Positions 1,858-23,487 of a stretch of 64,000 nt of DNA are shown piece by piece; position 1 is the stretch's first letter; each line of letters starts with the position of its first letter. The notes beneath the pieces were generated by a model, which saw nothing but the letters and a program-made list of their open reading frames with translations, did no database searches and was not told where the DNA came from. The position numbers were made by a program, and so were the translations under genes. The stretch lies in sequence record OR620964.1; one strand, written 5' to 3'.

Positions 1858-4800
1858 TTATACGTCTTTCGACTTGGATTGAGAAACTTTGATCTTCTCT
1901 AAGCCTTTAACTACAGACTTCAGGTTGGTAACAGCATAACCTGCTTTGATGATCTTGTTGATAAGTGTCTTAGCCTTAGGCACAGATGACGTAAAGGTAA
2001 TCCACATACCAGCAGACTTCTCAAACGTACCGAACTTACGAGTGTTCGGAATTTTCTTACCTACAAAGGTACGCATTTGTGGGTTAGTGTTCAGGTCAAA
2101 CATGATACGCAGACGGTCTTCCATCACCATTGGATAAGCCTTAACGTGCTTCTTATCCATTGCTGTTTTGTGGCGAACCAAGAAGAATTGCTTCAACTGT
2201 GATTGCAACTTAACAGCCTGACGATAGTTGAAACTCATCATACCTTTATCGGAGAAGCCATCTTGGATGAACTCAAGGCGTTTCAGTGATGGGTTATCAA
2301 ACTCATACTTCTTCTCTACATAGTCTAAGAACTTGGTGAAGTCTGCATAGTAGAAGCAATCGTAATAAACGTAATCACCGAACTCCACGAAGTCAAACTC
2401 TTTCATGGCTTTCGCATCAGGGTCTGTAGCATCCGCGTACAACGCAATAAAGCCGTTGTATATAGTAGGAGTCAGATCCAATGCCATATCGGCGCCACCA
2501 GTATCTTCCGTAGCTTTAGGCTTAGTGCTACGGCGAACTGTGTTATCCAATGGAGGCAATGCTTTAGATACCTTGCGCACTTTGGCAGCGGCTTCTTTAA
2601 CACCGTCGTTCGCTGGCTTACCTTCTTTCTTATTGACAGCACGTTTAGCAGCACGGGCAGCTTCGCGTTCTGTTTGCGCCACTTTGACACGAGTATCAGC
2701 AGTGGTAGAAGTTTCGATTTCGTCTTCAATAGAGTCATCAACAGATACTTTGGTTGTCTCTGTATCGATACGCTTACGATCCTGCTCGGTTGCCCAAGGC
2801 TTACGGACTTTGAAGAACTGATCCAGATCAGCTTTACCTACTTTCCCAGCAACGTGCACCTTAGTAGCAGGGATAGAGATTAACTCTTCTGTTCCAGCCA
2901 TACGAACTCGAACTGTACTGATTGGCGCGTCTACTTTCAACTTGCCATTCACCATACGAACGTTAATGCCTACGATAATACCATTACCAAACTCAGTCAC
3001 AACAGGCATACGATGAAGTGCGTTCTTTAACATTTCACCATCAGAGAAGTTGTGATTACGTGCCCAATCCAACAGTCGAACAAGTCCCCAGCCATGACGG
3101 TCTGGAATGTGCTGGTTAGCAACAACAGGGAACTGGTCAATCGTTTTGAATGAACGCAATGGCGCCACAGGAGTCAATGGTATCATAGCAGCCACAGTAG
3201 ACTTACGCATTTCTGCGAACTCTGAGGTCTCAATGTCATTCAAGTCACGCTTGGCGAGGAAGTAGTCTTGGAAGTCTTCGATGGTATTATTATCCACCAG
3301 CAGACTCTTACTCATCTTGATTGGTTGCAGTTCGTATTCATCGAGTTTGGCATAACGATCATTGCCCTTCTCGTCGAATTGCGTCTTCTCAATTGTCTTC
3401 CACATCAGTCGTGCAACTTTACCAACTTCCAGAGTCTTGTTGGTCATGATCCAGTCGATGAATACCAGTTCACGTTTCATATCACCCGGACGACCATCTT
3501 CATCCAGTTTTGCAGCAGATACATCTGGACGGAAGATACGCGCAGTAGACTGGTCATAAACACCTGGTGACCAAGGAGTATCTACACGAATAATACGACT
3601 ACCCATCTGCATGTTATGGCCTTCACTAATTGCTTGCTCGTTTGCAATCAAGATCTGAACATTTGGGTTCGTCTTAAACGCATCAAGGTTAGCAACTTTA
3701 TCTTGGCCTAACTTACCGACTTCGCCATGGAACAGCACAGCAACTTTCTTGTACTGGTCAGGCAGGGCATTATACACGGCGTTAGCAGCACGGGTATATC
3801 GGGTGAACACAATCAGCTTACCCTGTATTTCTTCTTTCCAGTAATCAGGATCTTCTGGTGGTGGAGTCATGGACGGAGGAAGGTCAAGACGTTTATAGCC
3901 ATCTGACTGCTTACGTGCCATGTACTTGATACCGTTATACATAGCGATATCATACTCACGAGGCGTTACGCCAGGCTTCCACTGGAAAATCTGGTGGGAA
4001 CGTTCTTCGTTATCACGCTCTGACTGTACTTCGAAGTGCTTACGGATACGATCAATAACAGTCAGAACTTTAACAGAGGTGAATTCTTTTACCCCAGCCT
4101 GTTCGAATGTCTCACGCGCTACGTCATCACCCATAGGGTCAGTCAAAAGCATTTCGATACGCTGGAAATACATATTCAGGTCAGCATTGGATGCCAACAG
4201 GCTACCCAGCACATCACCTTCTTCCAACTCATCTTCATCTATATCAGACTCTGCATCATCCTTAGATGAGGAATCATCGTCATCGTCATCACCACTAGAT
4301 TTCTTCTTAGTGTCTTTGGCTGCCTGATCCAACAGTTCTAACATTTCCTTATACATAGCATCATAAACTTGCTGGTGTAGTTCGGAGTTAGGAACAGATG
4401 GATCAGAAATATCAACCGATAAGAACGTATCAATTGGGTTCGGTAACATGAATGCCCAGTTTTTACGCTTATAGCTAATGAATGCTGTATGGTTAGACAG
4501 ACGCGCATGAGCACGACGAATCATAGCCAGACGGCCATCACCCTGATCTGCGATATCCAAGTTATCACCGAAGATAGCTGGTGTTAACAGAGCGGCTTGC
4601 CCAACAACGTCAGATACCAAGTCAGTAACCAATGTACCTGTAGCAAGACGTGCATAACGAATAGACGGAGCAGTGAAGATCGATTTCGTATTGAAGTGAA
4701 CAGCAGAACCAGACTGGCCACCTTGATAGTTCTTAACCTTGTGGCTCTCATCCAGCAGTACATAGCTGAAATTGAAGCGGTTGATAAACTCAACTGCACC

Positions 4801-7800
4801 ACGAATACGAACACGCACACCACCAACGTCAATGTTCATAACAGCATTAGCCAAGAAGCTAAGGCCAGCAACAAAGATAGTGTTCAACGGGGCTTGAGTG
4901 ATAACATCGTACAGACGTTCTTCACCCCAAGTGTTCACTGTATCAGAAGTGATAGGAATAGCATTCCAACCATTCATGATCTTATGCAGGTCATCACACC
5001 AGTTAGCAACAAGGTTTGTAGGACACAGAATCAGAGGACGAATGTTCTCTTCTCCAAGCTCCTCAAGCTCTTGCATCATGGCTGCGATATCAGTCAGACC
5101 AAGGATAGTGTTGTGAGACAGATAACCTTCTGCGTGATAGGTATGCGGACCTGGAACAGAAAGGTCGTACACCCACTTCAAGCCACTTCCATTAACAACA
5201 CGGTCTACCGGTATCCATACTTTGGTCGCAGACTCTTTGATAGCTAACCAGTCACTTTCAACTTCCTGCATAACCGCTTCATACACTTCTGCTCCATAAA
5301 GAGAACAGATAGCATTAAGCATACTGTCAAGTAGCTGGACTTTGTAGTTAGTGAGAACGTTATTCTCACAGTACAGATGGTCGAATCGCTTATTCATGCC
5401 TTTGCGCAGAACATCTTTGAGCGAACACACGCCTGTTGTCTTACGGCCAGTTTCACCTAAACGTAAATACGTATGTCGTGTCAGCGCAGTTGCGATACGG
5501 TCCAGAATTTTATTCGTCAAGTCACCTAAAGGCTTCTTGTTGAAAGGTCCGTGTACAGTACGATTAGTATCCTGCAACATAGTGCTACGAGATTCAGAGT
5601 AGGCAATACCTGCATCCAGTTGACCACGTTTGTGTGCAGATACAAAGCCTACACAGTCGCGGAACATTCTCATGTTCTCTTCGTGTTCCCACAAACCAAG
5701 CACGTAAGCAGTCACTGGTCGTTTTGCTTCTGTGTTGGTAGCATGTTTAATCTTCTTGGTAATAGAGCAATAGATGCCCATATTGTCCAGCAGAGATTTA
5801 ACATCGTACACGAGTTTCTTGCTGATCGAGCAATACGACCCGCGAAGACGACTGCCATTAGAACTTTCGGACAGTCTAATAGAGCCATCACCTTCGAACA
5901 TGGTGGCTAAGAAAGCAGACTGATAAATCTTAGGTGCACGTTTGATGCACTTAGGAATAACATGATCAGCCGATTTAGGATAGCCTATTAACTGATGCAG
6001 CCAATAACCAACAACACGGTGATTACGAACAGCATTAACACGTTCGTCAGAGTAAAGTGTCTCAGGCACATAACCAAACACTTTCTCATATAGAGAAGAA
6101 ACGTTAGCCAAAACGTCAGGACAATCGTTGCTTACAGAACACATACCGTTCGGACCGCAGTTACCTTCCGATACTACGTAACCTAAGAAGGCAGCCAGTT
6201 CTACCGTCATACGTGTAGGCAACTTACCGCCTAAGGCACGGAAGTCCTCAACAGTGCGCTCAAGCATGTTATGGTCGTTCATTAGCTGACGACTATCAAA
6301 CTGAGGAACAGTTGTAGCGTAAAGGTTAGCGCCTACAGTTTTCTGCAAATACATACCAACACGCATCTCATCCATGCGCAGGAACTTCTCTTTCCCGCTA
6401 GTAGGATCGATTGTCCAGAAACGGTGTTCGTTCAACGCATCCAGAATAGTGCCATCGTGCAGCTCAACTTTAGTGCTGGTAGTTGCTTTGCGTCGATACA
6501 CATAGTCCGTAGTGCGCTTACCGTTGTCGGTCATCACTGAGACAGCAAGGGGTCGAAGTTTGCCGCGAGTCTGATCGAAATCGTGGTCTAGAATCTCGTT
6601 CGCACTATCGCCCTCAGACCACAACTCACCTAAGTTAAGAACTCCTAGGTCTGTCGAAATTCGAGTGGTTTTGGTCTGACACTTGCCGCCGCCTGGGGCT
6701 ATAAACAGAACAGCATACTTAGGACGACGACGCAACGTTTGGTGAGCACCCAACTGGTGAGGCATTAACGCAGTACCTTCTTTCAGCCCTGGGATACGAA
6801 TATCGTCAGCACTAATTGAAGTATCAGGTTTCAGTCTCTCAACTTCTTCCTCCGCAGCAGCGAAGATCTCCATGCTACGTGGGATTACGCGAGAGAACAG
6901 CGCACAGAACGGAAGAACGATTTGTTGCACACGCACAGCAGAGGGTGCAGCCGCAGATGCAGCAAGAGAACTGAATACCTTCTTACGATCTGCTTCAAGC
7001 ATAGCAGTACATGCTTGACGGAACACAGCACCACCGAAGTAGTTAGCAAGTTGTCCCATGTTAGCCAGAGTAGATGTCTTACCCATACGGAAATAATGCG
7101 TATGGTTCTCCATTGACTCAGCAGCAGCTTGAACACTACCAAGCTCACGCATAAGGCTTGCGTTCAGGTTAGATCCACGGAAGCCACCAGCATCATTCAG
7201 TGTACGAATCATCGAACGCATTAGCACTTGACTTACAGGGAGTGCTTCTGCAACTGTGAAGTCATTTTCAATAATGCCTGCATACAGATTGTTGTCATAC
7301 TCACTATCAGACAGGTTAGAATCAGGCCCATCGTATCCCATGTCTTTACGTGCATTAGACATCAGAGTTTTTACATCAGGCACAAGTTTCTGATCAAACA
7401 TGTACTGGTAGGTTGCACATACCTGAGACAAGATAGTAAGTAAGTCACCTGAGCCATCAACTTTCTCAAGCGTAACAGATCCTTTACCATCAACAGATGA
7501 GATAAGACGACCGTTACCTGCTTCACCTTTAGCGGAAGTCACATAAAGCTCATCAGCAAGTTCATAGCTTTTCTGGAACAGCCCGTTACCTGCCATCGAC
7601 GTAATAACAGTAGTAACATCACGGAAGTTAGGAGATTCACCAGGCTCTGCAAAATCATAACCTAAGATATCAGCATTATCCAGTGCGGTTGGAGCCTTAG
7701 CACCAACAGTACGTGTAGACGTTACTTTGATACCACCACCGCTTGACGTATTCACAAGCATTGCGAAGTCAGGGTCAACGCCGATGCAGATGTTACTGAA

Positions 7801-9234
7801 ACGAGATAAGGATTTAGCAGTACCTTGCATTTCCTGATCGATATCCAGATTCTCTTCACGGGCAACAAACAGACTTGAACGAAGTGTATCATGCTCGGTG
7901 GATAATGGAATACCACGGTCGAACAGAGTTTCAAGTACACCATTTAGTGTATGCTCATACTCTTTGACCATTTCAACATCAATGTCATCACGCTTAGGCA
8001 AGCAAGCCATTGTACCGTTAGGCATAATGGTAAGCTCATCTGGCCCAGCAAATGTCTCATGCACTGCATAGCCAAACTTCTCACGTAACTGCTTAAGCAT
8101 AGGCAGAACAGTTGCAGAAGTAACATAACGTGGGATGTTAGCACGACGGTTAACACCAGAGCGGGAAGAGCCGCTAACACGCATGTAGTATTCGCCCCAG
8201 GATTGGAACCAACGATAGAGACACATCAAACTAAGGTCTGTGCTACCTTGGCAGATATACTCAACGAATTCCTTTTGTAGGCTTAATACAATGCCGCCTT
8301 CCACACGGACGTCTACTGCTTTTGAAACGTCATTGATTTCAACAGGTACATCTTTACCAATCTTAAGCGCTTGGAGTTTACGATCAAGTAACTGCTTAGA
8401 GGGAACAGAACGCAGACCAAACGAGAAGAAGTCGCCTAATTGTTCAGCGCTCGCTTTATCGAAGTTCTCAAACAGGTTGATCTCAACACGATTCAGTGAT
8501 GGATGGATAGATTGCAGAACGTTATTGAGAGCCTGCCAGTTAAAGTCCAGCGGGATACGAACCATCTTAGCAGCAAACAGATTTGTTTTACCACGAGGCT
8601 GACCGAAGATTGCTTCGTGAATCTGATTGGCAGCGCGAATAGCATTCTGTGCAATATCAGCAGAGTACACAGTGACTTTCATCTTCTCAAAGTCACTACC
8701 TGCTTCCATACGTGGGCGATTGTCACCCTGATCATTCAGTATGTTAAAGTTACCGAACAATGCAGCACTGGATGCAGCACAGGGTGTGCCGGACATGATG
8801 ATATCTTTACCACCATTATACTTACCGCTATTCTCGACGATGATACCAGCAGTGTTACTCATATTGGCACCGAGTAACGCTTTAACTTCTTTCATCATCT
8901 TACCGTCTGCCAGTGTAGCTTCAATCAAGCCAACACGGGATTGCAGTAACGTTTCGAAACGACGTGCGAACTGAGGCTCATCTACTTCCAGAATATCCTC
9001 TAGCTCAGGTGTATTTGCCAGAATCCAGCAAATGATATCAAAACAAGCTGTTACACGAGCAACAGTTCGTGCTTGAAACAAGCCCATCTTTTCAAATACC
9101 CAACGGCCTTTACCTGCTGGATAGATAGATTCAAGTTTCTTCTCTAACTCAGTGGGTAGGCTGTGGATACTCAACGCAGATTGAATAGACTCAACAATCT
9201 CAGCGCTGCCAGTCTTTGAAGTGCTGATTAACAT
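1858..9234 (-). CDS. Large SNF2/SWI2-family SF2 ATPase precursor containing one intein (~1934 aa after splicing)
   Basis: Walker A APGGGK/T split by the intein; motif II LLDESHKVKN; III LATGT; IV KLIVFTRY; V-VI ISEGHNMQ...DTPWSPGVYDQSTARIFR. Confidence 0.9.
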   Translation of the reverse strand: MLISTSKTGSAEIVESIQSALSIHSLPTELEKKLESIYPAGKGRWVFEKMGLFQARTVARVTACFDIICWILANTPELEDILEVDEPQFARRFETLLQSRVGLIEATLADGKMMKEVKALLGANMSNTAGIIVENSGKYNGGKDIIMSGTPCAASSAALFGNFNILNDQGDNRPRMEAGSDFEKMKVTVYSADIAQNAIRAANQIHEAIFGQPRGKTNLFAAKMVRIPLDFNWQALNNVLQSIHPSLNRVEINLFENFDKASAEQLGDFFSFGLRSVPSKQLLDRKLQALKIGKDVPVEINDVSKAVDVRVEGGIVLSLQKEFVEYICQGSTDLSLMCLYRWFQSWGEYYMRVSGSSRSGVNRRANIPRYVTSATVLPMLKQLREKFGYAVHETFAGPDELTIMPNGTMACLPKRDDIDVEMVKEYEHTLNGVLETLFDRGIPLSTEHDTLRSSLFVAREENLDIDQEMQGTAKSLSRFSNICIGVDPDFAMLVNTSSGGGIKVTSTRTVGAKAPTALDNADILGYDFAEPGESPNFRDVTTVITSMAGNGLFQKSYELADELYVTSAKGEAGNGRLISSVDGKGSVTLEKVDGSGDLLTILSQVCATYQYMFDQKLVPDVKTLMSNARKDMGYDGPDSNLSDSEYDNNLYAGIIENDFTVAEALPVSQVLMRSMIRTLNDAGGFRGSNLNASLMRELGSVQAAAESMENHTHYFRMGKTSTLANMGQLANYFGGAVFRQACTAMLEADRKKVFSSLAASAAAPSAVRVQQIVLPFCALFSRVIPRSMEIFAAAEEEVERLKPDTSISADDIRIPGLKEGTALMPHQLGAHQTLRRRPKYAVLFIAPGGGKCQTKTTRISTDLGVLNLGELWSEGDSANEILDHDFDQTRGKLRPLAVSVMTDNGKRTTDYVYRRKATTSTKVELHDGTILDALNEHRFWTIDPTSGKEKFLRMDEMRVGMYLQKTVGANLYATTVPQFDSRQLMNDHNMLERTVEDFRALGGKLPTRMTVELAAFLGYVVSEGNCGPNGMCSVSNDCPDVLANVSSLYEKVFGYVPETLYSDERVNAVRNHRVVGYWLHQLIGYPKSADHVIPKCIKRAPKIYQSAFLATMFEGDGSIRLSESSNGSRLRGSYCSISKKLVYDVKSLLDNMGIYCSITKKIKHATNTEAKRPVTAYVLGLWEHEENMRMFRDCVGFVSAHKRGQLDAGIAYSESRSTMLQDTNRTVHGPFNKKPLGDLTNKILDRIATALTRHTYLRLGETGRKTTGVCSLKDVLRKGMNKRFDHLYCENNVLTNYKVQLLDSMLNAICSLYGAEVYEAVMQEVESDWLAIKESATKVWIPVDRVVNGSGLKWVYDLSVPGPHTYHAEGYLSHNTILGLTDIAAMMQELEELGEENIRPLILCPTNLVANWCDDLHKIMNGWNAIPITSDTVNTWGEERLYDVITQAPLNTIFVAGLSFLANAVMNIDVGGVRVRIRGAVEFINRFNFSYVLLDESHKVKNYQGGQSGSAVHFNTKSIFTAPSIRYARLATGTLVTDLVSDVVGQAALLTPAIFGDNLDIADQGDGRLAMIRRAHARLSNHTAFISYKRKNWAFMLPNPIDTFLSVDISDPSVPNSELHQQVYDAMYKEMLELLDQAAKDTKKKSSGDDDDDDSSSKDDAESDIDEDELEEGDVLGSLLASNADLNMYFQRIEMLLTDPMGDDVARETFEQAGVKEFTSVKVLTVIDRIRKHFEVQSERDNEERSHQIFQWKPGVTPREYDIAMYNGIKYMARKQSDGYKRLDLPPSMTPPPEDPDYWKEEIQGKLIVFTRYTRAANAVYNALPDQYKKVAVLFHGEVGKLGQDKVANLDAFKTNPNVQILIANEQAISEGHNMQMGSRIIRVDTPWSPGVYDQSTARIFRPDVSAAKLDEDGRPGDMKRELVFIDWIMTNKTLEVGKVARLMWKTIEKTQFDEKGNDRYAKLDEYELQPIKMSKSLLVDNNTIEDFQDYFLAKRDLNDIETSEFAEMRKSTVAAMIPLTPVAPLRSFKTIDQFPVVANQHIPDRHGWGLVRLLDWARNHNFSDGEMLKNALHRMPVVTEFGNGIIVGINVRMVNGKLKVDAPISTVRVRMAGTEELISIPATKVHVAGKVGKADLDQFFKVRKPWATEQDRKRIDTETTKVSVDDSIEDEIETSTTADTRVKVAQTEREAARAAKRAVNKKEGKPANDGVKEAAAKVRKVSKALPPLDNTVRRSTKPKATEDTGGADMALDLTPTIYNGFIALYADATDPDAKAMKEFDFVEFGDYVYYDCFYYADFTKFLDYVEKKYEFDNPSLKRLEFIQDGFSDKGMMSFNYRQAVKLQSQLKQFFLVRHKTAMDKKHVKAYPMVMEDRLRIMFDLNTNPQMRTFVGKKIPNTRKFGTFEKSAGMWITFTSSVPKAKTLINKIIKAGYAVTNLKSVVKGLEKIKVSQSKSKDV
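5110..6681 (-). mobile_element. Intein with LAGLIDADG homing endonuclease, 524 aa, in the SNF2 P-loop
   Basis: Starts Cys (CQTKTTRI), ends His-Asn (YLSHN), +1 Thr; endonuclease blocks LGYVVSEGN and FLATMFEGDGS; YDLSVPGPHTY block F. Confidence 0.93.
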
Positions 9235-9734: not shown

Positions 9735-9743
9735 TCTGATCTC

Positions 9744-10526: not shown

Positions 10527-10528
10527 GT

Positions 10529-10888: not shown

Positions 10889-10917
10889 TATACTATCCTC
10901 TATTTAGCAATCAAGTG

Positions 10918-16228: not shown

Positions 16229-16310
16229 GATCGTCCTCTGCTTGTTGGAATTCGGATTACGTTAAAAATTAGATAAAAAGGTGTCAGATGCAGATAATAT
16301 TGCGCAATTG

Positions 16311-16319
16311 TATTTACAG
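16311..16319 (-). promoter_or_regulatory. Putative phage promoter motif CTGTAAATA inside a hairpin loop
   Basis: Exact motif flanked by inverted repeat arms 16290-16304 and 16327-16341. Confidence 0.55.
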
Positions 16320-16367
16320 GAAATCACGCAGTAATATCTGCTCTGGTTGAAATTAGTCACAGAACGT

Positions 16368-16397
16368 AAAAAGGGCAACCCGAAGGCCGCCCTTTTT
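16368..16397 (-). terminator. Rho-independent terminator, possibly bidirectional
   Basis: GGGCGGCC-TTCG-GGTTGCCC with T tracts on both strands, after the histone-like gene. Confidence 0.85.
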
Positions 16398-16427
16398 GTT
16401 TTATAAACTGTGTACTGTTACCGTAGA

Positions 16428-17126
16428 TTATACAGTTACTTTACCAGTCTTTTTGGTACGTGTTGCTTTCTTAGCGCCGGCTTTCTTAGCAGCATCATGC
16501 TTAACTGGTGCTTTCTTGGCGGTAGTTTCTTTACCGTTTTTCAGACGCGGAACTGGCTTCAACGTAGGCTTAATCAGTTTGATTTTAACTGCTTTAGCTT
16601 TAGGAGTCACGATCTTGTTGCCTTTAACAACTGGCTTACGCGCCAGACGTGCTTCCATACGAGCTTTCTGACGCAGTACCAAGTTCTGTTGTGCGGCTTT
16701 CTGTTTAGCGCCCAGGTTCTGACGGACAACTTTCTGGCGTGAAGCCATCAGTTTACGAACAGTCTGTTGAGATTTCTTGGTCGCTTTGATGCCGGCTTTG
16801 TATTTAGCCATACGCTCTTTCAGGCGTTGTTCCAGAGATTTGGTTTTAGCTTTAACACGCGCACCCTTCAGGTGTTTCGCACGTTCGCTATCAAATTTCT
16901 TGTCGGACGCATCTTTCTTAGTTGCTTTAGCTTTGGTAGCTTTTGCTTTAGGAGCAGCAGCGGCTTTTGGCTTAGCAGCCTTTGGTGCTTTGGCAGCTTT
17001 AGGCTTAGCGGCCTTAGGTGCTTTTACGGCTTTTGCCTTGGCAGCTTTTGGTGCTTTAGCCTTAACTTTAGAACCGCCTTTCTTTGGATCTTTAGGGCTG
17101 GTCAACTTACGATTTACTTTAGCCAT
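16428..17126 (-). CDS. Histone H1-like Lys/Ala-rich DNA-binding protein, 232 aa
   Basis: About 64 Lys and about 10 acidic residues by hand count; KAPKAAK/KPKAAK repeats; GAGG RBS; AT-rich upstream region; own terminator. Confidence 0.8.
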   Translation of the reverse strand: MAKVNRKLTSPKDPKKGGSKVKAKAPKAAKAKAVKAPKAAKPKAAKAPKAAKPKAAAAPKAKATKAKATKKDASDKKFDSERAKHLKGARVKAKTKSLEQRLKERMAKYKAGIKATKKSQQTVRKLMASRQKVVRQNLGAKQKAAQQNLVLRQKARMEARLARKPVVKGNKIVTPKAKAVKIKLIKPTLKPVPRLKNGKETTAKKAPVKHDAAKKAGAKKATRTKKTGKVTV

Positions 17127-17269
17127 GATACATTCCTCGTTTCATTTATTGTTGCCTCTCTTTGAGGCGTAGAGAATTAAATTCGTTCTGCACAGGAAAA
17201 TTAGTATATTTATTTTGTTTTAGCAGGTATTTATTTTAAATTTATTTCAAATAGTTTCTACTATATTTC

Positions 17270-18316
17270 CTATGAAGCAGTACCTAATTCAGACCTTATT
17301 TTGGCTATTTCTTTCATGGCTCTATCACGCATATGCTTCTTAATCCCTGACTCTTTTAAGAAAGAACGTAGACCGTCAGTAGGATCTATATCCGATACTT
17401 GTTGCTCCGATACATCGATAGTATCTACATTGTTAATATCTATTTTCTTATTTGTGGCATAGAGCTGGGCAATGTTTGGTACGCGTGTTCTTATATCGCC
17501 AGGTATAGTTATACTATCCTTAACGTAGACACGATATCGTATTGCCGCATTGACATCAAGCTGAGACCATTGCTTCTGGTCTGTAATCATAACAGTCTCG
17601 AAGCGGAAGCCAGGCTTACTATCAACAAACTTGTGTTTGACCACCAGCTTCTTCTTAACGTACTCTGCCTTGAAGTGAATGAATCCTTTAGGCAATCCCT
17701 CACCAAATGTTTTCTGATAAGGACTACCATTGTACAGGAAGCGCTTGGCCTCAAGATACTGGTATAAATGGATATGACCACTAATAGTAAAATCGCGTTC
17801 ATCTACTTTGAGATCTTTCTTAGTGCGTAGTGGACGACCATTATCACCAAGTGCACCTATTGCTTCCGTATGACAGAAGTTTAGACAAGGCTTCTTATGC
17901 TTGATAGACTTACGCGCAGGGAAAGGTAGGAAGTTAACAATCACTCCATCTATCTCTACTTGCTTTGGTCTAAGGAAGATATGAAGTGATTTTAAGAAAT
18001 CCCAATCACAAAAGCGCTTGATCAGATCCATAGACGTTTGGGTATTATCCGCCCAATCATGGTTACCACCACAGTACCACGACTCGATGATACCTTCGTA
18101 CTTACGGAAGTGCTGCAACAGCAACTCTTTCGTAGTATCTGCCATAGTATACTTATCTGTGATATCGCCAGGAATGATTACATGCTTGATTCCATGCTCG
18201 ACTGCATAGTTATAGATTCTATCTATTGTCTCAAGCTGACGTTGAATATGGTCTTGGGGGAAATGATTTGCCAGCGCTTCAAAGTGCCAGTCTGAGGTTG
18301 ATATACCTTCGAACAT
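17270..18316 (-). CDS. sbcD: SbcD/Mre11/gp47-like metallophosphoesterase nuclease
   Basis: Motifs SDWH, PGDITD, GGNHD, FCHT, SGHIH. Confidence 0.9.
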   Translation of the reverse strand: MFEGISTSDWHFEALANHFPQDHIQRQLETIDRIYNYAVEHGIKHVIIPGDITDKYTMADTTKELLLQHFRKYEGIIESWYCGGNHDWADNTQTSMDLIKRFCDWDFLKSLHIFLRPKQVEIDGVIVNFLPFPARKSIKHKKPCLNFCHTEAIGALGDNGRPLRTKKDLKVDERDFTISGHIHLYQYLEAKRFLYNGSPYQKTFGEGLPKGFIHFKAEYVKKKLVVKHKFVDSKPGFRFETVMITDQKQWSQLDVNAAIRYRVYVKDSITIPGDIRTRVPNIAQLYATNKKIDINNVDTIDVSEQQVSDIDPTDGLRSFLKESGIKKHMRDRAMKEIAKIRSELGTAS

Positions 18317-18348
18317 TAGTATTGTCTCTAATTGTTTTCTATATGCCT

Positions 18349-18357
18349 TATTTACAG
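18349..18357 (-). promoter_or_regulatory. Putative phage promoter motif CTGTAAATA
   Basis: Exact motif right after a terminator, 33 nt upstream of the sbcD ATG. Confidence 0.6.
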
Positions 18358-18380
18358 AAATGGGCAGCCGAAGCCACCCA
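18358..18380 (-). terminator. Rho-independent terminator
   Basis: TGGGTGGC-TTCG-GCTGCCCA-TTT. Confidence 0.75.
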
Positions 18381-18387
18381 TTATATT

Positions 18388-18477
18388 CTACTTAACCTGC
18401 TCGCGTAGTTCTTTAATACGATTGACGCTCTTTTCCATTTCGCCAAGAAGGCGAAACACTTCACCATAGTTAATCAT
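18388..18477 (-). CDS. Small 29-aa protein MINYGEVFRLLGEMEKSVNRIKELREQVK, absent from the ORF track
   Basis: ATG overlaps the YspA TGA (ATGA); ends just before a terminator; amphipathic helix pattern. Confidence 0.6.
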   Translation of the reverse strand: MINYGEVFRLLGEMEKSVNRIKELREQVK

Positions 18478-18998
18478 CTTTTGTTCTCCGTTACGAATCT
18501 GCCAGTTTCTTTAAAACTTAACCAGTCGCGCCATAGATACAGGACTCTCTTTTGATTAGCTAGTGCGTAATCAATACAGTTCTGTGTTCCAGAGGGCGCA
18601 CCAGAAGAGAGCGCAAATATCGTATCACTCTCTTTTACTATTGCGTGGTTACGAGTATCCAACGCAATCACGGGCGTTATTAACGCAAGCATTTCTTTAT
18701 CAGTTATAATACGGACTTCAGAGCTTCTGTTTAGGATAGTATCCAAATCTAGAACGCTCGCCAAAGGCCATCGTGCATTAAATCCAAGGTAGGGAATCAT
18801 ACTGATAACCTTATGCCCTTGTTCTATTGCAGCAACAGCCATTGCTTGGTCGAAGCCTAGCGCACATCCTTGTACAATAGTAACATCTGTATCTAACCTG
18901 AGTAGGATACGATGCGCGAAGCGATATAACTTTTTCTTAGCTATCGCTCCATATCCACCTAGGCGATTAGGTCTATGTCCAGTAACACCAACGATCAT
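18474..18998 (-). CDS. YspA/DUF1273 SLOG-family protein
   Basis: IVGVTGHRP, QGCALGFDQ, RNHAIV, SGAPSGTQNCIDYA. Confidence 0.8.
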   Translation of the reverse strand: MIVGVTGHRPNRLGGYGAIAKKKLYRFAHRILLRLDTDVTIVQGCALGFDQAMAVAAIEQGHKVISMIPYLGFNARWPLASVLDLDTILNRSSEVRIITDKEMLALITPVIALDTRNHAIVKESDTIFALSSGAPSGTQNCIDYALANQKRVLYLWRDWLSFKETGRFVTENKR

Positions 18999-19020
18999 AT
19001 ATGTCTCCTTTACCTATATG

Positions 19021-19029
19021 TATTTACAG
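19021..19029 (-). promoter_or_regulatory. Putative phage promoter motif CTGTAAATA
   Basis: Exact motif 23 nt upstream of the YspA ATG. Confidence 0.6.
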
Positions 19030-19040
19030 ATAAAGGTAGT

Positions 19041-19874
19041 CTATAGTGAGGTATAGCTAGTGGTATTTAAGGCAAGCGTGGGCTTGGTTCCAGGCACAGT
19101 AGGCTGCTGATAACTGCCATTGACAAGTATCTCATGGTCGCTAAACTTAATGAGGAGATTTGCACTAGGGCTTGTCACAGCGTCCGTGAATATAGGCTGC
19201 TCATCCACGCCTGCTTGAACAGTATAGGTATTTATTGGTGCCGCTCTTTGTGAGAACCAACCGCCGGATCCCGCTGCTGTATGGTACAAATCTGACATTC
19301 CTCTAAGGACCGTACCAACATTGGACACTGGAGTATTGACTGTAGGTCGTGCGTAGGCGTAAGCATCTCTTGCTGGATGTGTTCCAGAATAGACTGATAA
19401 TGAAACCTCACTGGTAGTATAGGAATATATTGTAGCTTGGGAATCGCCTGCCCGATACGCGCCTTTCTGACCGAACTCAGGCATGACAATATCTAATGTA
19501 GCGGATGAACATAAAGACAAAGGAACAAGGAAACTAAACACTTTTGTAGACGATGGTAAATAAGGAGATACGTCTTGTCCATTAGATCCATTGGATAACT
19601 CAGTTTGTCCCATAACAGGATTATCTATAATAGATGCTAATGTTGTTCCTCCTCGGTATTTAAAATTGGTCAAATAGTATTTACCATCCATTCGGCCTGA
19701 CACACAATTCACAACACCTATACCTGCAATTCCCCGTGCGCGAAGTACGGCAGTCTTTAACGTTGTACGATCTACTATTTGATCTATATCTATCCCATCA
19801 GCACGATCAAAAAGAAAGATTTCTGGCATTGTTGCACTAACAGCTAGATGATTGGCTGTGGATATAAACTGCAT
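19041..19874 (-). CDS. Hypothetical protein, 277 aa; N-terminal domain paralogous to 19886..20779
   Basis: PEIFLFD and YYLTNFKYRG vs PEAFLFD and YRYTNLKYKA. Confidence 0.75.
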   Translation of the reverse strand: MQFISTANHLAVSATMPEIFLFDRADGIDIDQIVDRTTLKTAVLRARGIAGIGVVNCVSGRMDGKYYLTNFKYRGGTTLASIIDNPVMGQTELSNGSNGQDVSPYLPSSTKVFSFLVPLSLCSSATLDIVMPEFGQKGAYRAGDSQATIYSYTTSEVSLSVYSGTHPARDAYAYARPTVNTPVSNVGTVLRGMSDLYHTAAGSGGWFSQRAAPINTYTVQAGVDEQPIFTDAVTSPSANLLIKFSDHEILVNGSYQQPTVPGTKPTLALNTTSYTSL

Positions 19875-19885
19875 AAGATGATTCC

Positions 19886-20779
19886 TTATAATCCAATAGA
19901 AAAGGACTTAGTAGAGATCGCTTTGTATCCGTATCGCTCTCCGGGTGTAAGTGATAGGCCATCGTTAACGGTGAATCCAGATAGATCCATAGAGAATACT
20001 GTATCACCCTTTGGAACGACCAACAGATTTGGCCTAACAACATCGGTGCTTTGTACAGAGAGCCCTGACACCATCTGTGCAAATCGAGCGCCGCTTTGAT
20101 TTAATGCTGGATTAGGATCTGTTACTCCTCCAGTGCGTTCAACTTTATCGTAGGATAAGAGAATAGGAGGTGCTCTGTGGCTACTAATAAGATCTGCGTA
20201 TGCAATTCTAGAATCAACTATACCCAGTGCTACTGTTCCTACTACGGTATTCGTTTTATTAAAGGAAAGGAGCTTCGATACCTGTATAGGCGTAGACTGT
20301 ACAGATGAGGTCTGTGTTACGTAAGTTCTAGAGTCACAGTGGTTAGTATTATCTACTACCTCACCCATAAGCTGCCAACTAATTATGCCATTACTAGAGT
20401 TTTCACCATTGACGAATGGTTGCTGCCAAGAGTTTATGATAAAGATAAGTCTATTATCTTGTCCCATTGACCAGTCAGCATATGAAGCTAGTTGGCCAGA
20501 ACTTCTTGTCAGTCGCTCACGGTAGGTAAGCGACTCTTCTGTTGCTTTGTACTTTAGGTTTGTATACCTATACGCATACCCACCATTGCCCCGAACAATC
20601 GTTGTTTTACCGTCATGGCCAATGCAAGCACGAGCTAGGTGGGCAAACTGTATGAAATGATCGACAGACGTAAACACTTTAGGCACAGTAGGATCAAGCA
20701 CTGTATCAAACAGAAATGCCTCAGGCAGTTGGTCTATTGGATCATCGAAGTTAAAGTTATTCCCATTCACATACATCAT
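19886..20779 (-). CDS. Hypothetical protein, 297 aa; paralog of 19041..19874
   Basis: GGAG RBS; shared motifs with the neighbour. Confidence 0.8.
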   Translation of the reverse strand: MMYVNGNNFNFDDPIDQLPEAFLFDTVLDPTVPKVFTSVDHFIQFAHLARACIGHDGKTTIVRGNGGYAYRYTNLKYKATEESLTYRERLTRSSGQLASYADWSMGQDNRLIFIINSWQQPFVNGENSSNGIISWQLMGEVVDNTNHCDSRTYVTQTSSVQSTPIQVSKLLSFNKTNTVVGTVALGIVDSRIAYADLISSHRAPPILLSYDKVERTGGVTDPNPALNQSGARFAQMVSGLSVQSTDVVRPNLLVVPKGDTVFSMDLSGFTVNDGLSLTPGERYGYKAISTKSFSIGL

Positions 20780-20807
20780 AATGATTTACTCCTGCTTTAG
20801 AAACGAC

Positions 20808-20830
20808 AAAGGGCCGCACTAAGGCAGCCC
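20808..20830 (-). terminator. Rho-independent terminator
   Basis: GGGCTGC-CTTAGT-GCGGCCC-TTT. Confidence 0.65.
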
Positions 20831-20837
20831 TAAGGGA

Positions 20838-21203
20838 TTACGCAACTACTTCAAGCTCCCTATCACCTGAGTTCCAGATCAATTCACGAATAGTACGTGG
20901 TAAGATAATGCATCCACTAGAGGCAGTGCCTGGAGCTTTAACACTATCACCATGTATCTGGAAAGCAGATCTGCCATACATAGTATTACTCTTGGCCGGG
21001 AGTAAGTTCATTGCATACGGGCCTGTCTTAGCACTTGTATGTGGCTCACATACGGTATAGTGTCCTACTGGCAGAGGGCCTTCTCCAACCATACTTGTCG
21101 AGTCAGCACGATTCTTATACTGACCTTTGCCACTATAGCCAGTGGCAACAATCTTACCGTTCTTATCAAACATCTTACCCGATGTTATCTCATATCGCCA
21201 CAT
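20838..21203 (-). CDS. Tlde1/DUF2778-family L,D-transpeptidase-fold peptidoglycan peptidase
   Basis: GYSG, GPLPVGHY, GRSAFQIHGD...ASSGCII with the catalytic His/Cys pair. Confidence 0.8.
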   Translation of the reverse strand: MWRYEITSGKMFDKNGKIVATGYSGKGQYKNRADSTSMVGEGPLPVGHYTVCEPHTSAKTGPYAMNLLPAKSNTMYGRSAFQIHGDSVKAPGTASSGCIILPRTIRELIWNSGDRELEVVA

Positions 21204-21212
21204 GGTTATCTC

Positions 21213-21608
21213 CTATTCCGGTTCGTAGGTAGCAGCAGATTTGTACCGCATGTTCAAGCTCTCATTTTTCTTAAACATGGATACAGTTTCTGGCAGGCTA
21301 GCAGTAGGTTTAACGTAGGGTCTGAATCCCATTGCATAGAACAGACGTGTACTTTCAACACTACTTGTTTGCGCGCCAATATCTGCACGATAGCGACGAA
21401 TCACTTCTTTTATTAGTCCGGCACCTACCCCTTGCTTACGGTATTTATCCTCAACAAAGAAATCTGTGACAGAGTGCTTGGTAGGACTGTATGGGCCGTC
21501 AGTTAGAACAGCGATACGTCCGCGCTCTTGTGGATCAACAATGACAGTACCAAATCCTGATTGCTGGCGAGTGATGAATCCAGATGATAGACTGATTGTA
21601 ATAATCAT
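21213..21608 (-). CDS. GNAT-family acetyltransferase with N-terminal ISLS tag
   Basis: Acetyl-CoA motif A FFVEDKYRKQGVGAGLI and LFYAMGF; begins MIITISLS. Confidence 0.8.
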   Translation of the reverse strand: MIITISLSSGFITRQQSGFGTVIVDPQERGRIAVLTDGPYSPTKHSVTDFFVEDKYRKQGVGAGLIKEVIRRYRADIGAQTSSVESTRLFYAMGFRPYVKPTASLPETVSMFKKNESLNMRYKSAATYEPE

Positions 21609-21796
21609 ACAATGATGAACCTATGATGGTTACGATTTGTTTTTGGACAGAACCAGATTTCCCAGAATGTCTTTCCCATACCAAAGTTAATCATTCGTTC
21701 GTTATAGCGACGAACAAACACCATACCCTTTGGTTGGTTAGGATAGCCATAGCAGTAGTCCCAGAACGAATTAAATGCGTCTAAGATACTCTTCAT
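21605..21796 (-). CDS. Hypothetical protein, 63 aa
   Basis: GGAC RBS; TGA overlaps the GNAT ATG. Confidence 0.65.
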   Translation of the reverse strand: MKSILDAFNSFWDYCYGYPNQPKGMVFVRRYNERMINFGMGKTFWEIWFCPKTNRNHHRFIIV

Positions 21797-21813
21797 GGTG
21801 CTTGTCCTATCAG

Positions 21814-23487
21814 TTATTTTCGAACGCGAATCGCTGGGTCTTTAGACTTGTCATATCGATCTGGGCGAACGATGACAACTCCGGTAGGCCCTGTCTTAAT
21901 CTCAAGAAGGCCGGGGACTTCAAAACCTTTAGCTGTGTCCACCACTGTGAATTTCTTCGCCAGCTTCTCACGCATCTTAGCAAGCCCTTCATTGGACTTA
22001 GCGATCTTTCCGCCTTTAAGATTTCGAATCAGACCAGCATCACGGCCAACGTTGAATTTGAAGCCAACAGAGTTCAGAATTTCAGGTAGTGCCTTGTCAA
22101 TCTTTTCAGCCGTGTCACTACCTTGAGGCTTTTTTACAGCAGCAGCCTTTGCTTTTGTTCTATCTTGCTTCATTTCCTTTTTGGCGGCTATACGCGCTTT
22201 ATGCGTAGGACGCGCAATCTTACCTTTAGCCAGAACTTTAGATCGTGCTGTTTCTGCTTTCTCTCTTGCTGCCTTACTCGCAGGAGTCTGTACTTTAACC
22301 CCTACGGAATCAAAAGCTGATTGCTTAACAAACTTAGGCTTAAATGTACCACGTTTACCTGTAGCACCGAACTCAGTCAGCTTGATCGCACGAACAGCTT
22401 TCAAGGCTTTGACAACACCTGGGCCTGTAGCAATGTCCGTAGAGGACATAGGCATGTTCAAGCCCGACAGGCCGTGTTTCTTGGCATGAGAGTTTGCTTC
22501 TTTAAGCAGTGCTTTAGCTTGTTTGATATCCGCAGCACTTTTGGTTTTCTCAGTAACATACGTCGCACGTAAGGCTACTCTACGTGGGCCTGCTGGCACT
22601 TGTTTACTTTTAGCAAGCGTAGTATCTGCCTTAACGCGAGAAGTCATACCGCTGATAGCAGCAACTTTAGCTTTCTTTAACAGACCGAGGATGGCAGTAA
22701 GCTCTGGTTTCTTTGTATCTGGAATGATCAGGGTTCGAACACCAGATACTTTAGCAAATTTATAGCTAGGTGTCTTAGCAGACTCCGAGATAACGTCGGA
22801 GCATAGGGAGAGCGTGATTTTCATATTTGATTTCCGTACAATGTTTGGGTTCTCAGATGGATCAGACCTATCAAGATCATCTGATCGGAAGTTTTCTTGT
22901 GTCTCAATAGGTACGGTTAGACCTAACCCATAAGAAGCAAATATCTGCTTGAGTGACTTATGGACTTGTTCCTGTAACCATATCTCATTATCCCGACTTG
23001 GGTCTATCAAAGAGACTTCAATGATATTCTGCCTTGGGTCTACACAGGCATATTGAACACGCGCTATCTTCTGTGTGTTTAGCCACTCATTGAGAATCAT
23101 GTCTAGCTCTGGACTAAACTTAATCCCTAGGTCAGACAGCCAGAACTGAAAAGAAGATAGAGGAGGAGGTGCAGAGAGAGACGTAAACTCACCAGTAGGA
23201 TTCAGCTTTTCCATGGCAGAAGAAGCCTCGTACACGGACTGGAAGTTCTCGGCAATCGTAGCGATGTTCTTGAGCTTATAGCTATTTGTTGCCAGTCCCT
23301 TACGGATCAACTTGGCTACTTTAAGTTCGTAGTCACCAGTATCACCCTGAGAGTAGGCTACAAATGCATAGAGAGCAATACCATTATCTTCACGCAGGAG
23401 TCGATGGTCAAGTACACGGAACCCAACTATCTTTGTTAATGCCTGTGCGCTCATCTGGATTGCTGATAGAGAAATGGAGATTCTCAT
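21814..23487 (-). CDS. Two-part protein, 557 aa: N-terminal domain plus Lys/Ala-rich C-terminal part, with a probable internal start at 22824
   Basis: Begins MRISISLS; second tag MKITLSLC at aa 222; basic K/A-rich C-terminal part. Confidence 0.8.
   Translation of the reverse strand: MRISISLSAIQMSAQALTKIVGFRVLDHRLLREDNGIALYAFVAYSQGDTGDYELKVAKLIRKGLATNSYKLKNIATIAENFQSVYEASSAMEKLNPTGEFTSLSAPPPLSSFQFWLSDLGIKFSPELDMILNEWLNTQKIARVQYACVDPRQNIIEVSLIDPSRDNEIWLQEQVHKSLKQIFASYGLGLTVPIETQENFRSDDLDRSDPSENPNIVRKSNMKITLSLCSDVISESAKTPSYKFAKVSGVRTLIIPDTKKPELTAILGLLKKAKVAAISGMTSRVKADTTLAKSKQVPAGPRRVALRATYVTEKTKSAADIKQAKALLKEANSHAKKHGLSGLNMPMSSTDIATGPGVVKALKAVRAIKLTEFGATGKRGTFKPKFVKQSAFDSVGVKVQTPASKAAREKAETARSKVLAKGKIARPTHKARIAAKKEMKQDRTKAKAAAVKKPQGSDTAEKIDKALPEILNSVGFKFNVGRDAGLIRNLKGGKIAKSNEGLAKMREKLAKKFTVVDTAKGFEVPGLLEIKTGPTGVVIVRPDRYDKSKDPAIRVRK

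What the first reader, a model, noticed from the sequence alone, without database searches (positions are those of the whole stretch)
1858..23487. Possible phage chromatin system: H1-like condenser, SNF2 remodeller and lysine acetyltransferase
Seen: within 22 kb on one strand lie a SNF2 ATPase (1858..9234), an H1-like protein (16428..17126), other Lys-rich proteins (10929..11768 and the C-terminal part of 21814..23487) and a GNAT (21213..21608). The GNAT sits ~200 bp from the K/A-rich gene, and both carry the ISLS tag. Established: SNF2 motors displace DNA-bound proteins, lysine acetylation weakens H1/protamine-type DNA binding, and bacterial H1-like proteins (Chlamydia Hc1/Hc2) condense nucleoids. 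Inference, speculative: basic proteins compact or shield phage DNA and are released by acetylation and ATP-driven remodelling. I know of no such described phage system.
Basis: inference. Interest (0 to 1): 0.7.

Follow-up and report, generated by a model that had tools for sequence, protein, structure and literature searches.

The report
Packaged H1-like protein and SNF2 motor
In this jumbo Yersinia phage, a histone-H1-like basic protein and a giant SNF2 ATPase are conserved core genes whose counterparts are found in purified particles of a related phage, so they are probably packaged with the DNA, whereas the nearby acetyltransferase is a rare accessory gene that does not travel with them.

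Summary
The "SNF2" gene encodes a 2458-aa precursor with a 524-aa LAGLIDADG intein in its Walker A loop. An intein-less 1934-aa allele exists in a near-identical phage.

The K/A-rich "H1-like" gene lies directly downstream of the SbcD-like gene in 33 of 35 related loci. It matches no H1, Hc1 or Hc2 domain. In the relative PaBG, published virion SDS-PAGE/MALDI identified both the syntenic K/A-rich protein (PaBG_00191) and the giant helicase (PaBG_00202). They are therefore most likely packaged proteins: a DNA-neutralising internal protein and a co-packaged DNA motor.

The GNAT is absent from all 37 related loci and occurs in only one other phage record. Its "ISLS tag" is not a link to the K-rich gene. 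It is an N-terminal octapeptide carried by about ten unrelated ORFs in this genome, lies outside the predicted GNAT fold, and changes form with lineage.

Verdict: the three-part acetylation-controlled chromatin system is not supported. A packaged basic protein plus SNF2 motor is plausible but untested. The tag is the most novel item.

The parts
1858..9234 (-). Giant SNF2-family ATPase precursor (2458 aa; 1934 aa after splicing). Residues 1-851 have no recognisable fold. The SNF2 core spans the intein. There is a basic linker and a C-terminal domain.
   Evidence: Pfam. PDB 1Z63 match. Homology to PaBG gp284/PaBG_00202, E 2e-175, which is a virion protein. N-terminal AF2 model has pLDDT 80 with no fold match.
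5110..6681 (-). 524-aa LAGLIDADG intein (residues 852-1375) inserted between K and T of the Walker A motif GGGK|T. It starts with Cys, ends with His-Asn, and the +1 residue is Thr.
   Evidence: Alignment with the intein-less Y3 and PaBG homologues. The natural 1934-aa intein-less allele P0006 joins residue 851 directly to 1376. Pfam LAGLIDADG_3 and Intein_splicing.
9234..10888 (-). Two conserved ORFs of unknown function (166 and 260 aa) and an HNH endonuclease, lying between the promoter motif at 10918 and the helicase, with no terminator-like hairpin between that motif and the end of the helicase gene.
   Evidence: ORFs and Pfam HNH. The same order occurs in Y3, PaBG and Lu11. Promoter motif at 10918-10926. 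Hairpin after the helicase.
10918..10926 (-). CTGTAAATA, the core of the 'middle/late promoter' annotated in Lu11. Further copies lie at 16311, 18349 and 19021 within the finding.
   Evidence: 9 matches in the window against 0.78 expected. 24 in the genome, always on the coding strand upstream of genes. Lu11 annotation.
10929..11768 (-). 279-aa protein with a poly-Lys N-terminal half and a conserved helical C-terminal domain. Function unknown.
   Evidence: Composition. PHROG 23026, unknown function. C-terminal domain conserved in 64 phage records including PaBG and Lu11. Not among the 14 identified PaBG virion bands.
12685..13848 (-). Head-tail connector protein.
   Evidence: PHROG 17327, E 7e-173.
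16428..17126 (-). H1-tail-like K/A-rich protein (232 aa, net charge +68). It has a conserved N-terminal motif, variable K/A/P repeats, a conserved basic helical centre and a conserved C-terminal tail. It has its own 143-nt AT-rich leader and a hairpin after the gene.
   Evidence: A K/A-rich ORF sits at this position in 33 of 35 related loci. The PaBG positional counterpart PaBG_00191 is a virion protein seen in several gel bands. No Pfam hit at E<=1.
17270..18316 (-). SbcD/Mre11-like nuclease, used here as the anchor for comparing loci.
   Evidence: Pfam Metallophos_2. Alignment A1 and 37 related loci.
21213..21608 (-). Minimal GNAT acetyltransferase (131 aa). Residues 1-8 form the ISLS tag and lie outside the fold.
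   Evidence: Pfam. AF2 model pLDDT 82, with residues 1-8 below 50. Foldseek matches are generic GNATs. Only 4 homologues among 5.8 billion proteins and one other phage record.
21814..23487 (-). 557-aa ORF that corresponds to two separate genes in relatives. The acidic N-terminal domain (22825..23487) carries the ISLS tag. The basic K/A-rich half (21814..22824) starts at an internal Met with a tag-like leader ending in SES.
   Evidence: The N-terminal part is 59% identical to Y3 gp195. The C-terminal part is 42% identical to Y3 gp187.
23487..23819 (-). 110-aa protein with the N-terminal leader M-T-A-I-K-L-N-L...SES, the same leader type as the basic half of the 557-aa ORF.
44..1186 (-). 380-aa basic protein (pI 9.6) with the same SES-type N-terminal leader, two genes downstream of the helicase.

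Best explanation
The stretch belongs to the conserved core of a PaBG/Lu11/Y3-type ('Lupandier') jumbo myovirus. It is not a dedicated chromatin operon.

(1) The K/A-rich H1-tail-like protein (16428..17126) is made in quantity, packaged in the head with the 249-kb genome, neutralises or organises the DNA by charge, and is trimmed by proteolysis. (2) The giant SNF2-family ATPase (1858..9234) becomes active after its intein splices out. It is also packaged, enters the cell with or on the DNA, and acts there as a double-strand-DNA translocase. Possible roles are pulling in the genome, clearing proteins from it or protecting it.

What is shown: conservation, synteny, composition, SNF2 motifs, the intein anatomy, and virion association of both counterparts in PaBG. 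What is inferred: packaging in this phage, DNA binding by the basic protein, and any action of the ATPase on it.

The GNAT is an unrelated, rare accessory gene in a plastic interval between the SbcD-like and Rad50/SbcC-like genes. Its target is unknown. Host proteins are the published expectation for jumbo-phage GNATs.
For: - Identity and synteny.
- PaBG virion gel (PMC7412058, Table 1). Band 1 is 221,161.95 Da, gp202. This is PaBG_00202, CDS 148541..154450, computed mass 221,159 Da, the homologue of the window helicase at E 2e-175. Band 8 is 35,272.92 Da, gp191. This is PaBG_00191, CDS 139631..140629, computed mass 35,272.5 Da, K 26%, A 25%, pI 11.3, lying directly after the SbcD gene. gp191 was seen in several bands, which the authors read as proteolysis.
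- A K/A-rich ORF lies directly downstream of the SbcD gene in 33 of 35 loci, with SbcD identity falling to 39%.
- In phiRSL1 and Motura the helicase homologue sits inside the head module, between the connector and the prohead protease and major capsid genes.
- SNF2 assignment.
- Intein.
- GNAT rarity and lack of co-occurrence.
- Published expectation for jumbo-phage GNATs, modifying host proteins such as RNA polymerase in the way phiKMV Rac does: PMC7824862.
Against: - There is no virion proteome for this phage or its close relatives. The Y3 paper with such data could not be read.
- Homology between the window's H1-like protein and PaBG_00191 cannot be shown: BLASTP E 12 and hhalign E 0.13. 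The link rests on position and composition only.
- Very basic and DNA-binding proteins can co-purify with CsCl-banded phage through stray DNA.
- The helicase operon and the SbcD gene carry the CTGTAAATA motif, which also precedes the DNA polymerase, clamp loader and primase genes but not the capsid, sheath or portal genes examined. This expression class fits replication and recombination genes at least as well as structural genes.
- The helicase lies next to the DNA polymerase I gene.
Confidence: 0.55

Rival explanations
1. One reading: an integrated phage chromatin system in which the K-rich proteins condense phage DNA and are released by GNAT-catalysed lysine acetylation together with SNF2 remodelling.
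For: All components exist on one strand within 22 kb. The basic protein and the SNF2 counterpart are both virion-associated in PaBG. The GNAT fold is real.
Against: The GNAT is absent from 37 of 37 related loci that keep the H1-like gene, the K-rich 279-aa gene and the start of the helicase gene where the flank reaches it. It occurs in 2 phage records, against 58 for the H1-like gene and 99 for the helicase. The shared tag is genome-wide, not specific to this pair. The genes lie in separate transcription units among lysis and recombination genes. The nearest GNAT structures are a mix of small-molecule, N-terminal and tRNA acetyltransferases.
Confidence: 0.05
2. Intracellular reading. The SNF2 protein is a replication or recombination helicase (a UvsW-like role) and the K/A-rich protein is a nucleoid-associated protein that organises replicating phage DNA or compacts host DNA. 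Their presence in PaBG particles would then be co-purification with DNA.
For: The helicase lies next to the DNA polymerase I gene and is annotated as a DNA helicase. The H1-like gene follows the SbcD-like gene. Both units use the CTGTAAATA motif that is shared with replication genes. Iyer et al. propose that jumbo-phage Snf2 helicases can stand in for UvsW, although they say this of phage groups 1 and 3, not of PaBG's subgroup 2.2 (PMC7824862).
Against: Both PaBG proteins gave Coomassie-visible bands from CsCl-purified particles, and the basic one shows maturation-like proteolysis. In phiRSL1 and Motura the helicase lies inside the head gene module. A 1934-aa protein with an 851-aa N-terminal region of unknown fold is unlike known recombination helicases.
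Confidence: 0.25
3. Counter-defence reading. The giant ATPase is a packaged, ejected 'polyvalent' protein like P1 DarB that protects incoming DNA from restriction, and the basic proteins are co-ejected shields.
For: Virion association in PaBG. Very large multidomain architecture. Precedents are DarB and the injected polyvalent proteins cited in PMC7824862.
Against: No methyltransferase, nuclease or other effector domain was detected. P1 was not among the 99 phage records with tblastn hits to the ATPase half. PADLOC matches cover only the generic helicase lobes.
Confidence: 0.15

Closest known systems
T4 internal proteins IPI-IPIII and Alt, with their capsid-targeting sequence
   Same: Small basic proteins packaged with the DNA and ejected with it. 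A short conserved N-terminal peptide sits on otherwise unrelated cargo encoded in plastic loci. They are processed by the prohead protease. This description of T4 is from my own knowledge.
   Different: There is no sequence similarity. The basic protein here is far more Lys/Ala-rich and repetitive. The tag here (M-E-I-x-V-S-L-S) has not been shown to target anything, and the H1-like protein itself does not carry it.
phiKZ inner-body and other packaged head proteins, including a predicted helicase
   Same: A jumbo phage that packages abundant internal proteins and a predicted helicase, many of which are ejected with the genome (review PMC13282480).
   Different: It is a different lineage. The phage studied here has no virion RNA polymerase or nucleus genes annotated in the portion read, it carries a sigma factor instead, and no homology was tested or seen.
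P1 DarB
   Same: A virion-packaged SF2 helicase-containing protein of about 2000 aa or more (own knowledge).
   Different: DarB carries a methyltransferase and is not of the SNF2 family. P1 was not among the tblastn hits.
Eukaryotic linker histone H1 C-terminal tail, Chlamydia Hc1/Hc2 and Pseudomonas AlgP-type proteins
   Same: K/A/P-rich low-complexity repeats and an extreme pI. The nearest named ESM Atlas clusters carry Pfam HC2, but at scores of 0.70 or less, which is below the noise level.
   Different: There is no winged-helix globular domain and no Pfam Linker_histone, Hc1 or HC2 hit, even at E<=1. The resemblance is compositional.
phiKMV Rac and other phage GNATs that acetylate host proteins
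   Same: A small phage-encoded GNAT with no partner domain. Iyer et al. predict host-protein targets for jumbo-phage GNATs (PMC7824862).
   Different: No specific similarity to Rac was tested. The substrate is unknown.
SNF2/Rad54 ATPases (Sulfolobus SSO1653, RapA, DISARM DrmD, Zorya ZorD)
   Same: Motifs I and II (DExH followed by KN), and Pfam SNF2-rel_dom plus Helicase_C.
   Different: An 851-aa N-terminal region and a roughly 500-aa C-terminal region without known folds. Virion association. An intein in the P-loop.

Membership tests
SNF2/Rad54-like ATPases (SF2) | Pfam SNF2-rel_dom (N lobe) at or above the gathering score, plus Helicase_C (C lobe) | tested here: met
   The precursor scores 24.8 bits against a 24.9 cut-off because the intein splits the domain. 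The natural intein-less allele P0006 scores 31.7 bits, and Helicase_C scores 29.7 bits. PaBG scores 34.2 bits.
SNF2/Rad54-like ATPases (SF2) | Walker A GxGKT and motif II DExH followed by x-x-K-N | tested here: met
   GGGK|T, interrupted by the intein, and DESHKVKN.
SNF2/Rad54-like ATPases (SF2) | SNF2-specific helical insertions between the RecA lobes, and dsDNA translocation without strand separation | not tested
Activity needs biochemistry.
Linker histone H1/H5 | Winged-helix globular domain (Pfam Linker_histone) | tested here: not met
   No Pfam family at E<=1. The ESM Atlas model has low confidence, pLDDT 0.58.
Linker histone H1/H5 | K/A/P-rich basic tail | tested here: met
   K 28%, A 20%, a repeat of 11 aa (33 nt), pI 11.6.
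Chlamydial Hc1/Hc2 histone-like proteins | Match to Pfam Hc1 or HC2 | tested here: not met
   No hit at E<=1. There is only a sub-threshold language-model resemblance to HC2-bearing clusters.
GNAT acetyltransferases | GNAT fold with the acetyl-CoA motif R/Q-x-x-G-x-G/A | tested here: met
   Pfam Acetyltransf_10, _7 and _1. The motif RKQGVGAG. AF2 model with Foldseek probability 1.00 against many GNATs.
Protein lysine acetyltransferases acting on the K-rich proteins | Substrate specificity for protein lysines | not testable with these tools
   The nearest structures span small-molecule, N-terminal and tRNA acetyltransferases.
Inteins with a LAGLIDADG homing endonuclease | Cys/Ser at position 1, a C-terminal His-Asn, a nucleophile at +1, an insertion in a conserved host motif, and an intein-less allele | tested here: met
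T4-type capsid-targeting sequence | A short N-terminal peptide shared by unrelated proteins | tested here: met
   10 N-terminal occurrences against 0.24-0.58 expected. The tag lies outside the GNAT and Nudix folds.
T4-type capsid-targeting sequence | Tagged proteins are found in proheads or virions and the tag is cleaved by the prohead protease | not testable with these tools
   No proteome is available for a tag-bearing phage.

The most novel reading that the evidence does not exclude
The phage packages its genome as a nucleoprotein coated with the H1-tail-like protein, together with a giant SNF2 motor that strips or translocates this 'virion chromatin' on entry. The pair would be conserved across a whole jumbo-phage lineage. 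In addition, the M-E-I-x-V-S-L-S octapeptide would be a lineage-specific sorting signal that loads a changeable set of enzymes (GNAT, Nudix and others) for co-delivery.
Probability: 0.2. Interest if true: 0.75.

Novelty: new variant of a known kind. Interest (0 to 1): 0.5.

Why it matters
How 250 kb of DNA is charge-neutralised in a jumbo phage head, and how it is handled in the first minutes after ejection, is largely unknown outside the phiKZ group. An abundant H1-tail-like virion protein paired with a packaged 220-kDa SNF2 motor, conserved from Yersinia phages to Pseudomonas phages, would be a tractable second model.

The two proteins were listed in the PaBG virion table as 'unknown' and 'RuvB helicase-like' without interpretation.

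Separately, an N-terminal octapeptide shared by about ten unrelated proteins, which changes form with phage lineage, looks like a sorting, processing or degradation signal that has not been described. If so, it would allow a whole functional class of jumbo-phage proteins to be predicted from sequence.

Tried and rejected
- Homology of the H1-like protein to PaBG_00191 could not be shown: BLASTP E 12 and hhalign E 0.13. I therefore call it a positional and compositional counterpart only.
- The helicase N-terminal 851 aa gave a good AF2 model but no fold match: Foldseek best E 0.5, VIA-align best Z 4.5, and the ESM Atlas was uninformative.
I removed it and did not send it elsewhere.
- The Y3 virion-proteome paper is not held. 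The GenBank notes for Y3 and Lu11 carry no proteomic flags.
- No infection RNA-seq exists among the runs that hold this sequence, only metagenomes.
- I rejected a DNA-level explanation of the tag (a promoter or a leader RNA). Codons differ between copies and the upstream regions are unrelated.
- I rejected a Sec signal peptide because the tag is too short and too polar.
- I rejected significant clustering of K-rich genes.
- PADLOC gave nothing beyond generic helicase lobes.
- Pfam and PHROGs gave no function for the 279-aa, 557-aa, 110-aa or 380-aa proteins, or for the large tagged proteins of relatives.


Full report
**Identity and layout.** The window is 100% identical to Yersinia phage fHe-Yen9-02 (OR620964.1, 248,678 bp, host Y. 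enterocolitica O:9). Window position 1 is record position 62001. Its relatives are the Erwinia phages Y3, Alexandra and Yoloswag, the Dickeya JA and AD1 phages and, more distantly, Pseudomonas PaBG and Lu11. This is the 'Lupandier' group of PMC7412058. All genes in 1..46,000 are on the minus strand. In order of transcription, the stretch holds:

- endolysin (GH108)
- a 110-aa ORF
- the 557-aa ORF
- a 63-aa ORF
- the GNAT
- a Tlde1/DUF2778 protein
- two ORFs of unknown function
- a SLOG/DprA-like protein
- the SbcD-like nuclease
- the H1-like protein
- two ORFs of unknown function
- the head-tail connector
- one ORF of unknown function
- the K-rich 279-aa protein
- an HNH endonuclease
- two ORFs of unknown function
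- the giant ATPase
- a protein annotated as a putative lysozyme in Y3 and PaBG
- a 380-aa basic protein

The same order holds in Y3, PaBG and Lu11.

**Check of the observation.** One correction concerns significance. Lys-rich ORFs are scattered over the genome, including a KAEK-repeat protein at record 164343..164864 and the tail of the SSB. The local 'cluster' is therefore not statistically notable.

**The ATPase.** The 2458-aa ORF is a precursor. Aligning it with the Y3 (1951 aa) and PaBG (1969 aa) homologues shows one 524-aa insertion, residues 852-1375 (window 5110..6681). It lies between the Lys and Thr of the Walker A motif, begins with Cys, ends with His-Asn and is followed by Thr. It contains a LAGLIDADG domain. 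A natural allele of exactly 1934 aa, 98-99% identical over the two aligned halves and joining residue 851 directly to 1376, exists on a 40-kb assembly contig.

That intein-less allele passes the Pfam SNF2-rel_dom threshold (31.7 against 24.9 bits), as does Helicase_C. Motif II reads DESHKVKN. The only PDB sequence matches are the Sulfolobus SWI2/SNF2 core. SNF2 membership is therefore met at the domain and motif level.

The N-terminal 851 aa fold confidently (pLDDT 80, pTM 0.62) but match nothing known.

Homologues occur in 99 phage records, nearly all from jumbo phages. In phiRSL1 and Motura the gene lies inside the head module, between the connector and the prohead protease and major capsid genes.

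**The H1-like protein.** It has 232 aa, K 28%, A 20%, pI 11.6 and net charge +68, the most positive in the genome. Its architecture in close relatives is a conserved N-terminal motif, a variable K/A/P repeat region (here a 33-nt tandem repeat), a conserved basic helical centre of about 120 aa and a conserved tail.

It has no Pfam hit even at E<=1, so it is not a linker histone or an Hc1/Hc2 member. The likeness is compositional.

Using the SbcD-like gene as an anchor, I fetched 37 related loci from IMG/VR. A K/A-rich ORF (K 21-29%) lies immediately downstream of the SbcD gene in 33 of the 35 loci that extend that far, with SbcD identity falling to 39%. Across the deep split (the PaBG-like branch) sequence homology cannot be shown. 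Position and composition are conserved rather than sequence.

The gene has its own 143-nt AT-rich leader and a hairpin after it, as expected for a strongly and separately expressed gene.

**Experimental anchor.** PMC7412058 separated CsCl-purified PaBG particles by SDS-PAGE and identified 14 Coomassie bands by MALDI.

- Band 1 (221,161.95 Da, gp202, 'RuvB helicase-like') is PaBG_00202, CDS 148541..154450. I computed 221,159 Da for this ORF, and it is the homologue of the window ATPase.
- Band 8 (35,272.92 Da, gp191, 'Unknown') is PaBG_00191, CDS 139631..140629. I computed 35,272.5 Da for this ORF (K 26%, A 25%, pI 11.3), and it lies directly after the SbcD gene.

The paper's supplementary annotation confirms both locus tags. 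The authors also note that gp191 appeared in several bands, which indicates proteolysis. This is the strongest evidence available. It shifts the interpretation towards packaged proteins rather than an intracellular regulatory system.

**The GNAT.** It is a real but minimal GNAT. It is absent from all 37 related loci. It is present in only one other phage record, the 314-kb Pseudomonas phage HRDY3 at 43% identity, and has four homologues among 5.8 billion proteins.

The GNAT lies in a plastic interval between the SbcD-like gene and a gene with a Rad50-type CxxC zinc hook, whose positional counterpart in Y3 is annotated as the SbcC exonuclease (window 26322..28634). In Y3 that interval holds an unrelated tagged 170-aa protein rather than a GNAT, at an adjacent rather than identical position.

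**The 'ISLS tag'.** It also begins a Nudix hydrolase (gene 008c) and genes 049c, 100c, 102c, 130, 140 and 306c. That makes about ten N-terminal occurrences, against 0.24-0.58 expected.

- Codons differ between copies and the upstream DNA is unrelated, so selection acts on the peptide.
- The tag lies outside the folds. The Nudix domain starts at residue 20, and GNAT residues 1-8 have pLDDT below 50.
- In Erwinia and Dickeya relatives the tag heads other, unrelated proteins of 169 to 760 aa.
- In HRDY3, 10 of 19 genes in a 12-kb stretch around the GNAT homologue begin M-E-[LMV]-x-[LI]-[AT]-[LVI]-A, mostly M-E-[LM]-x-L-A-[LV]-A. The tag therefore changes form with lineage.

So the tag does not link the GNAT to the K-rich gene. 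It marks a class of proteins whose common fate is unknown. Packaging, processing and degradation are all possible.

A second, related leader (M-x-[IL]-K-[LF]-x... ending in S-E-S) heads the 110-aa ORF, the 380-aa ORF, the basic half of the 557-aa ORF and their Y3 paralogues. The major capsid protein has V-S-E-S at about residue 65. This is about where the roughly 20% maturation loss reported for PaBG's capsid protein would fall, and PaBG has I-I-E-Q at that point. S-E|S is thus a candidate prohead-protease site. This is inference only.

**Transcription.** CTGTAAATA is the core of the sites annotated in Lu11 as middle/late promoters. It occurs 9 times in the window against 0.78 expected and 24 times in the genome, always upstream of genes on the coding strand. 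Examples are the HNH-to-helicase block, the block of two unknown ORFs, the connector and a further unknown ORF, the SbcD gene and the SLOG gene. It also precedes the DNA polymerase, clamp loader, primase and sigma factor genes, but not the capsid, sheath or portal genes. G+C-rich hairpins separate the units. The 22 kb is therefore several units, and the promoter class is shared with replication genes. This is the main point in favour of the intracellular rival.

**Verdict.** The best-supported reading (confidence 0.55) is that the H1-tail-like protein and the SNF2 ATPase are packaged core proteins of this lineage, and that the GNAT is an unrelated accessory gene. Whether the motor acts on the basic protein is open; I give it about 0.2. 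The acetylation link is unlikely, at about 0.05. The intracellular replication and nucleoid reading retains about 0.25.

Packaged basic proteins and packaged helicases are known in other phages, so this is a new variant of a known kind. The N-terminal tag is the most novel observation.

Noticed in passing
window 21585-21608, 23464-23487, 29561-29584, 30230-30253 (all minus strand), 48195-48218 and 53484-53507 (plus strand); also record 4459, 48781 and 216182 outside the window: The N-terminal octapeptide M-[EKRQH]-I-x-[IVL]-S-[LM]-S heads about ten unrelated ORFs (GNAT, Nudix, a PGDYG-domain protein and small unknowns). There are 10 occurrences against 0.24-0.58 expected. Conservation is at the peptide level, not the DNA level, and the tag lies outside the GNAT and Nudix folds. 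In Pseudomonas phage HRDY3 the equivalent tag, mostly M-E-[LM]-x-L-A-[LV]-A, sits on 10 of 19 neighbouring genes. Its function is unknown.
   Followed up: partly
window 23487-23819, 44-1186 and 21814-22824 (minus strand); L003 (Y3) gp174, gp187, gp194, gp196: A second N-terminal leader of 13-18 aa ending in S-E-S is shared by several basic or small proteins. The major capsid protein (record 19958-21061) has V-S-E-S near residue 65, about where maturation cleavage is expected. This is a candidate prohead-protease site and propeptide.
   Followed up: partly
window 5110-6681 (minus strand): A 524-aa LAGLIDADG intein sits in the Walker A loop of the giant ATPase. An intein-less allele (P0006, 1934 aa), 98-99% identical over the two aligned halves, occurs on a 40-kb assembly contig. 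The GNAT homologue P0001 (98% identical) also has a longest contig of 40,241 bp.
   Followed up: yes
window 56205-59708 (plus strand): The UvsX/RecA-like recombinase is 1167 aa and also carries an intein (Pfam Intein_splicing, residues 301-641), so the window encodes at least two intein-bearing DNA enzymes.
   Followed up: partly
window 10918, 16311, 18349, 19021, 29099, 31689 and 46353 (minus strand); 42076 and 53767 (plus strand): CTGTAAATA occurs 9 times in the window against 0.78 expected and 24 times in the genome, upstream of replication, recombination and connector units. It is identical to the core of the sites annotated as middle/late promoters in Lu11.
   Followed up: partly
window 26322-28634 (minus strand): The 770-aa 'hypothetical protein' has a CxxC zinc-hook motif (CPTC) of the Rad50/SbcC type. 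Its positional counterpart in Y3 is annotated as the SbcC exonuclease. It lies 8 kb from the SbcD-like gene, and the interval between the two is filled with variable accessory and lysis genes.
   Followed up: no
record 164343-164864 (outside the window; locus L044 22343-22864): A second K/A-rich repeat protein (173 aa, K 28%, KAEK-type repeats, net charge +27) is encoded far from the finding.
   Followed up: no
window 20838-21203 (minus strand): A Tlde1/DUF2778 (L,D-transpeptidase-like) protein is conserved next to the GNAT slot in most close relatives, near the GH108 endolysin.
   Followed up: no
window 21814-23487 (minus strand): The 557-aa ORF is a read-through fusion of what are two separate genes in Y3 and many relatives. 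The second part keeps its own Met and leader at residue 222.
   Followed up: partly
L049 (phiRSL1) 6034-7476: phiRSL1 has the helicase homologue but no K/A-rich ORF within 20 kb on either side of it. It encodes a homospermidine synthase 12 kb upstream, a possible alternative polyamine route to DNA charge neutralisation.
   Followed up: no
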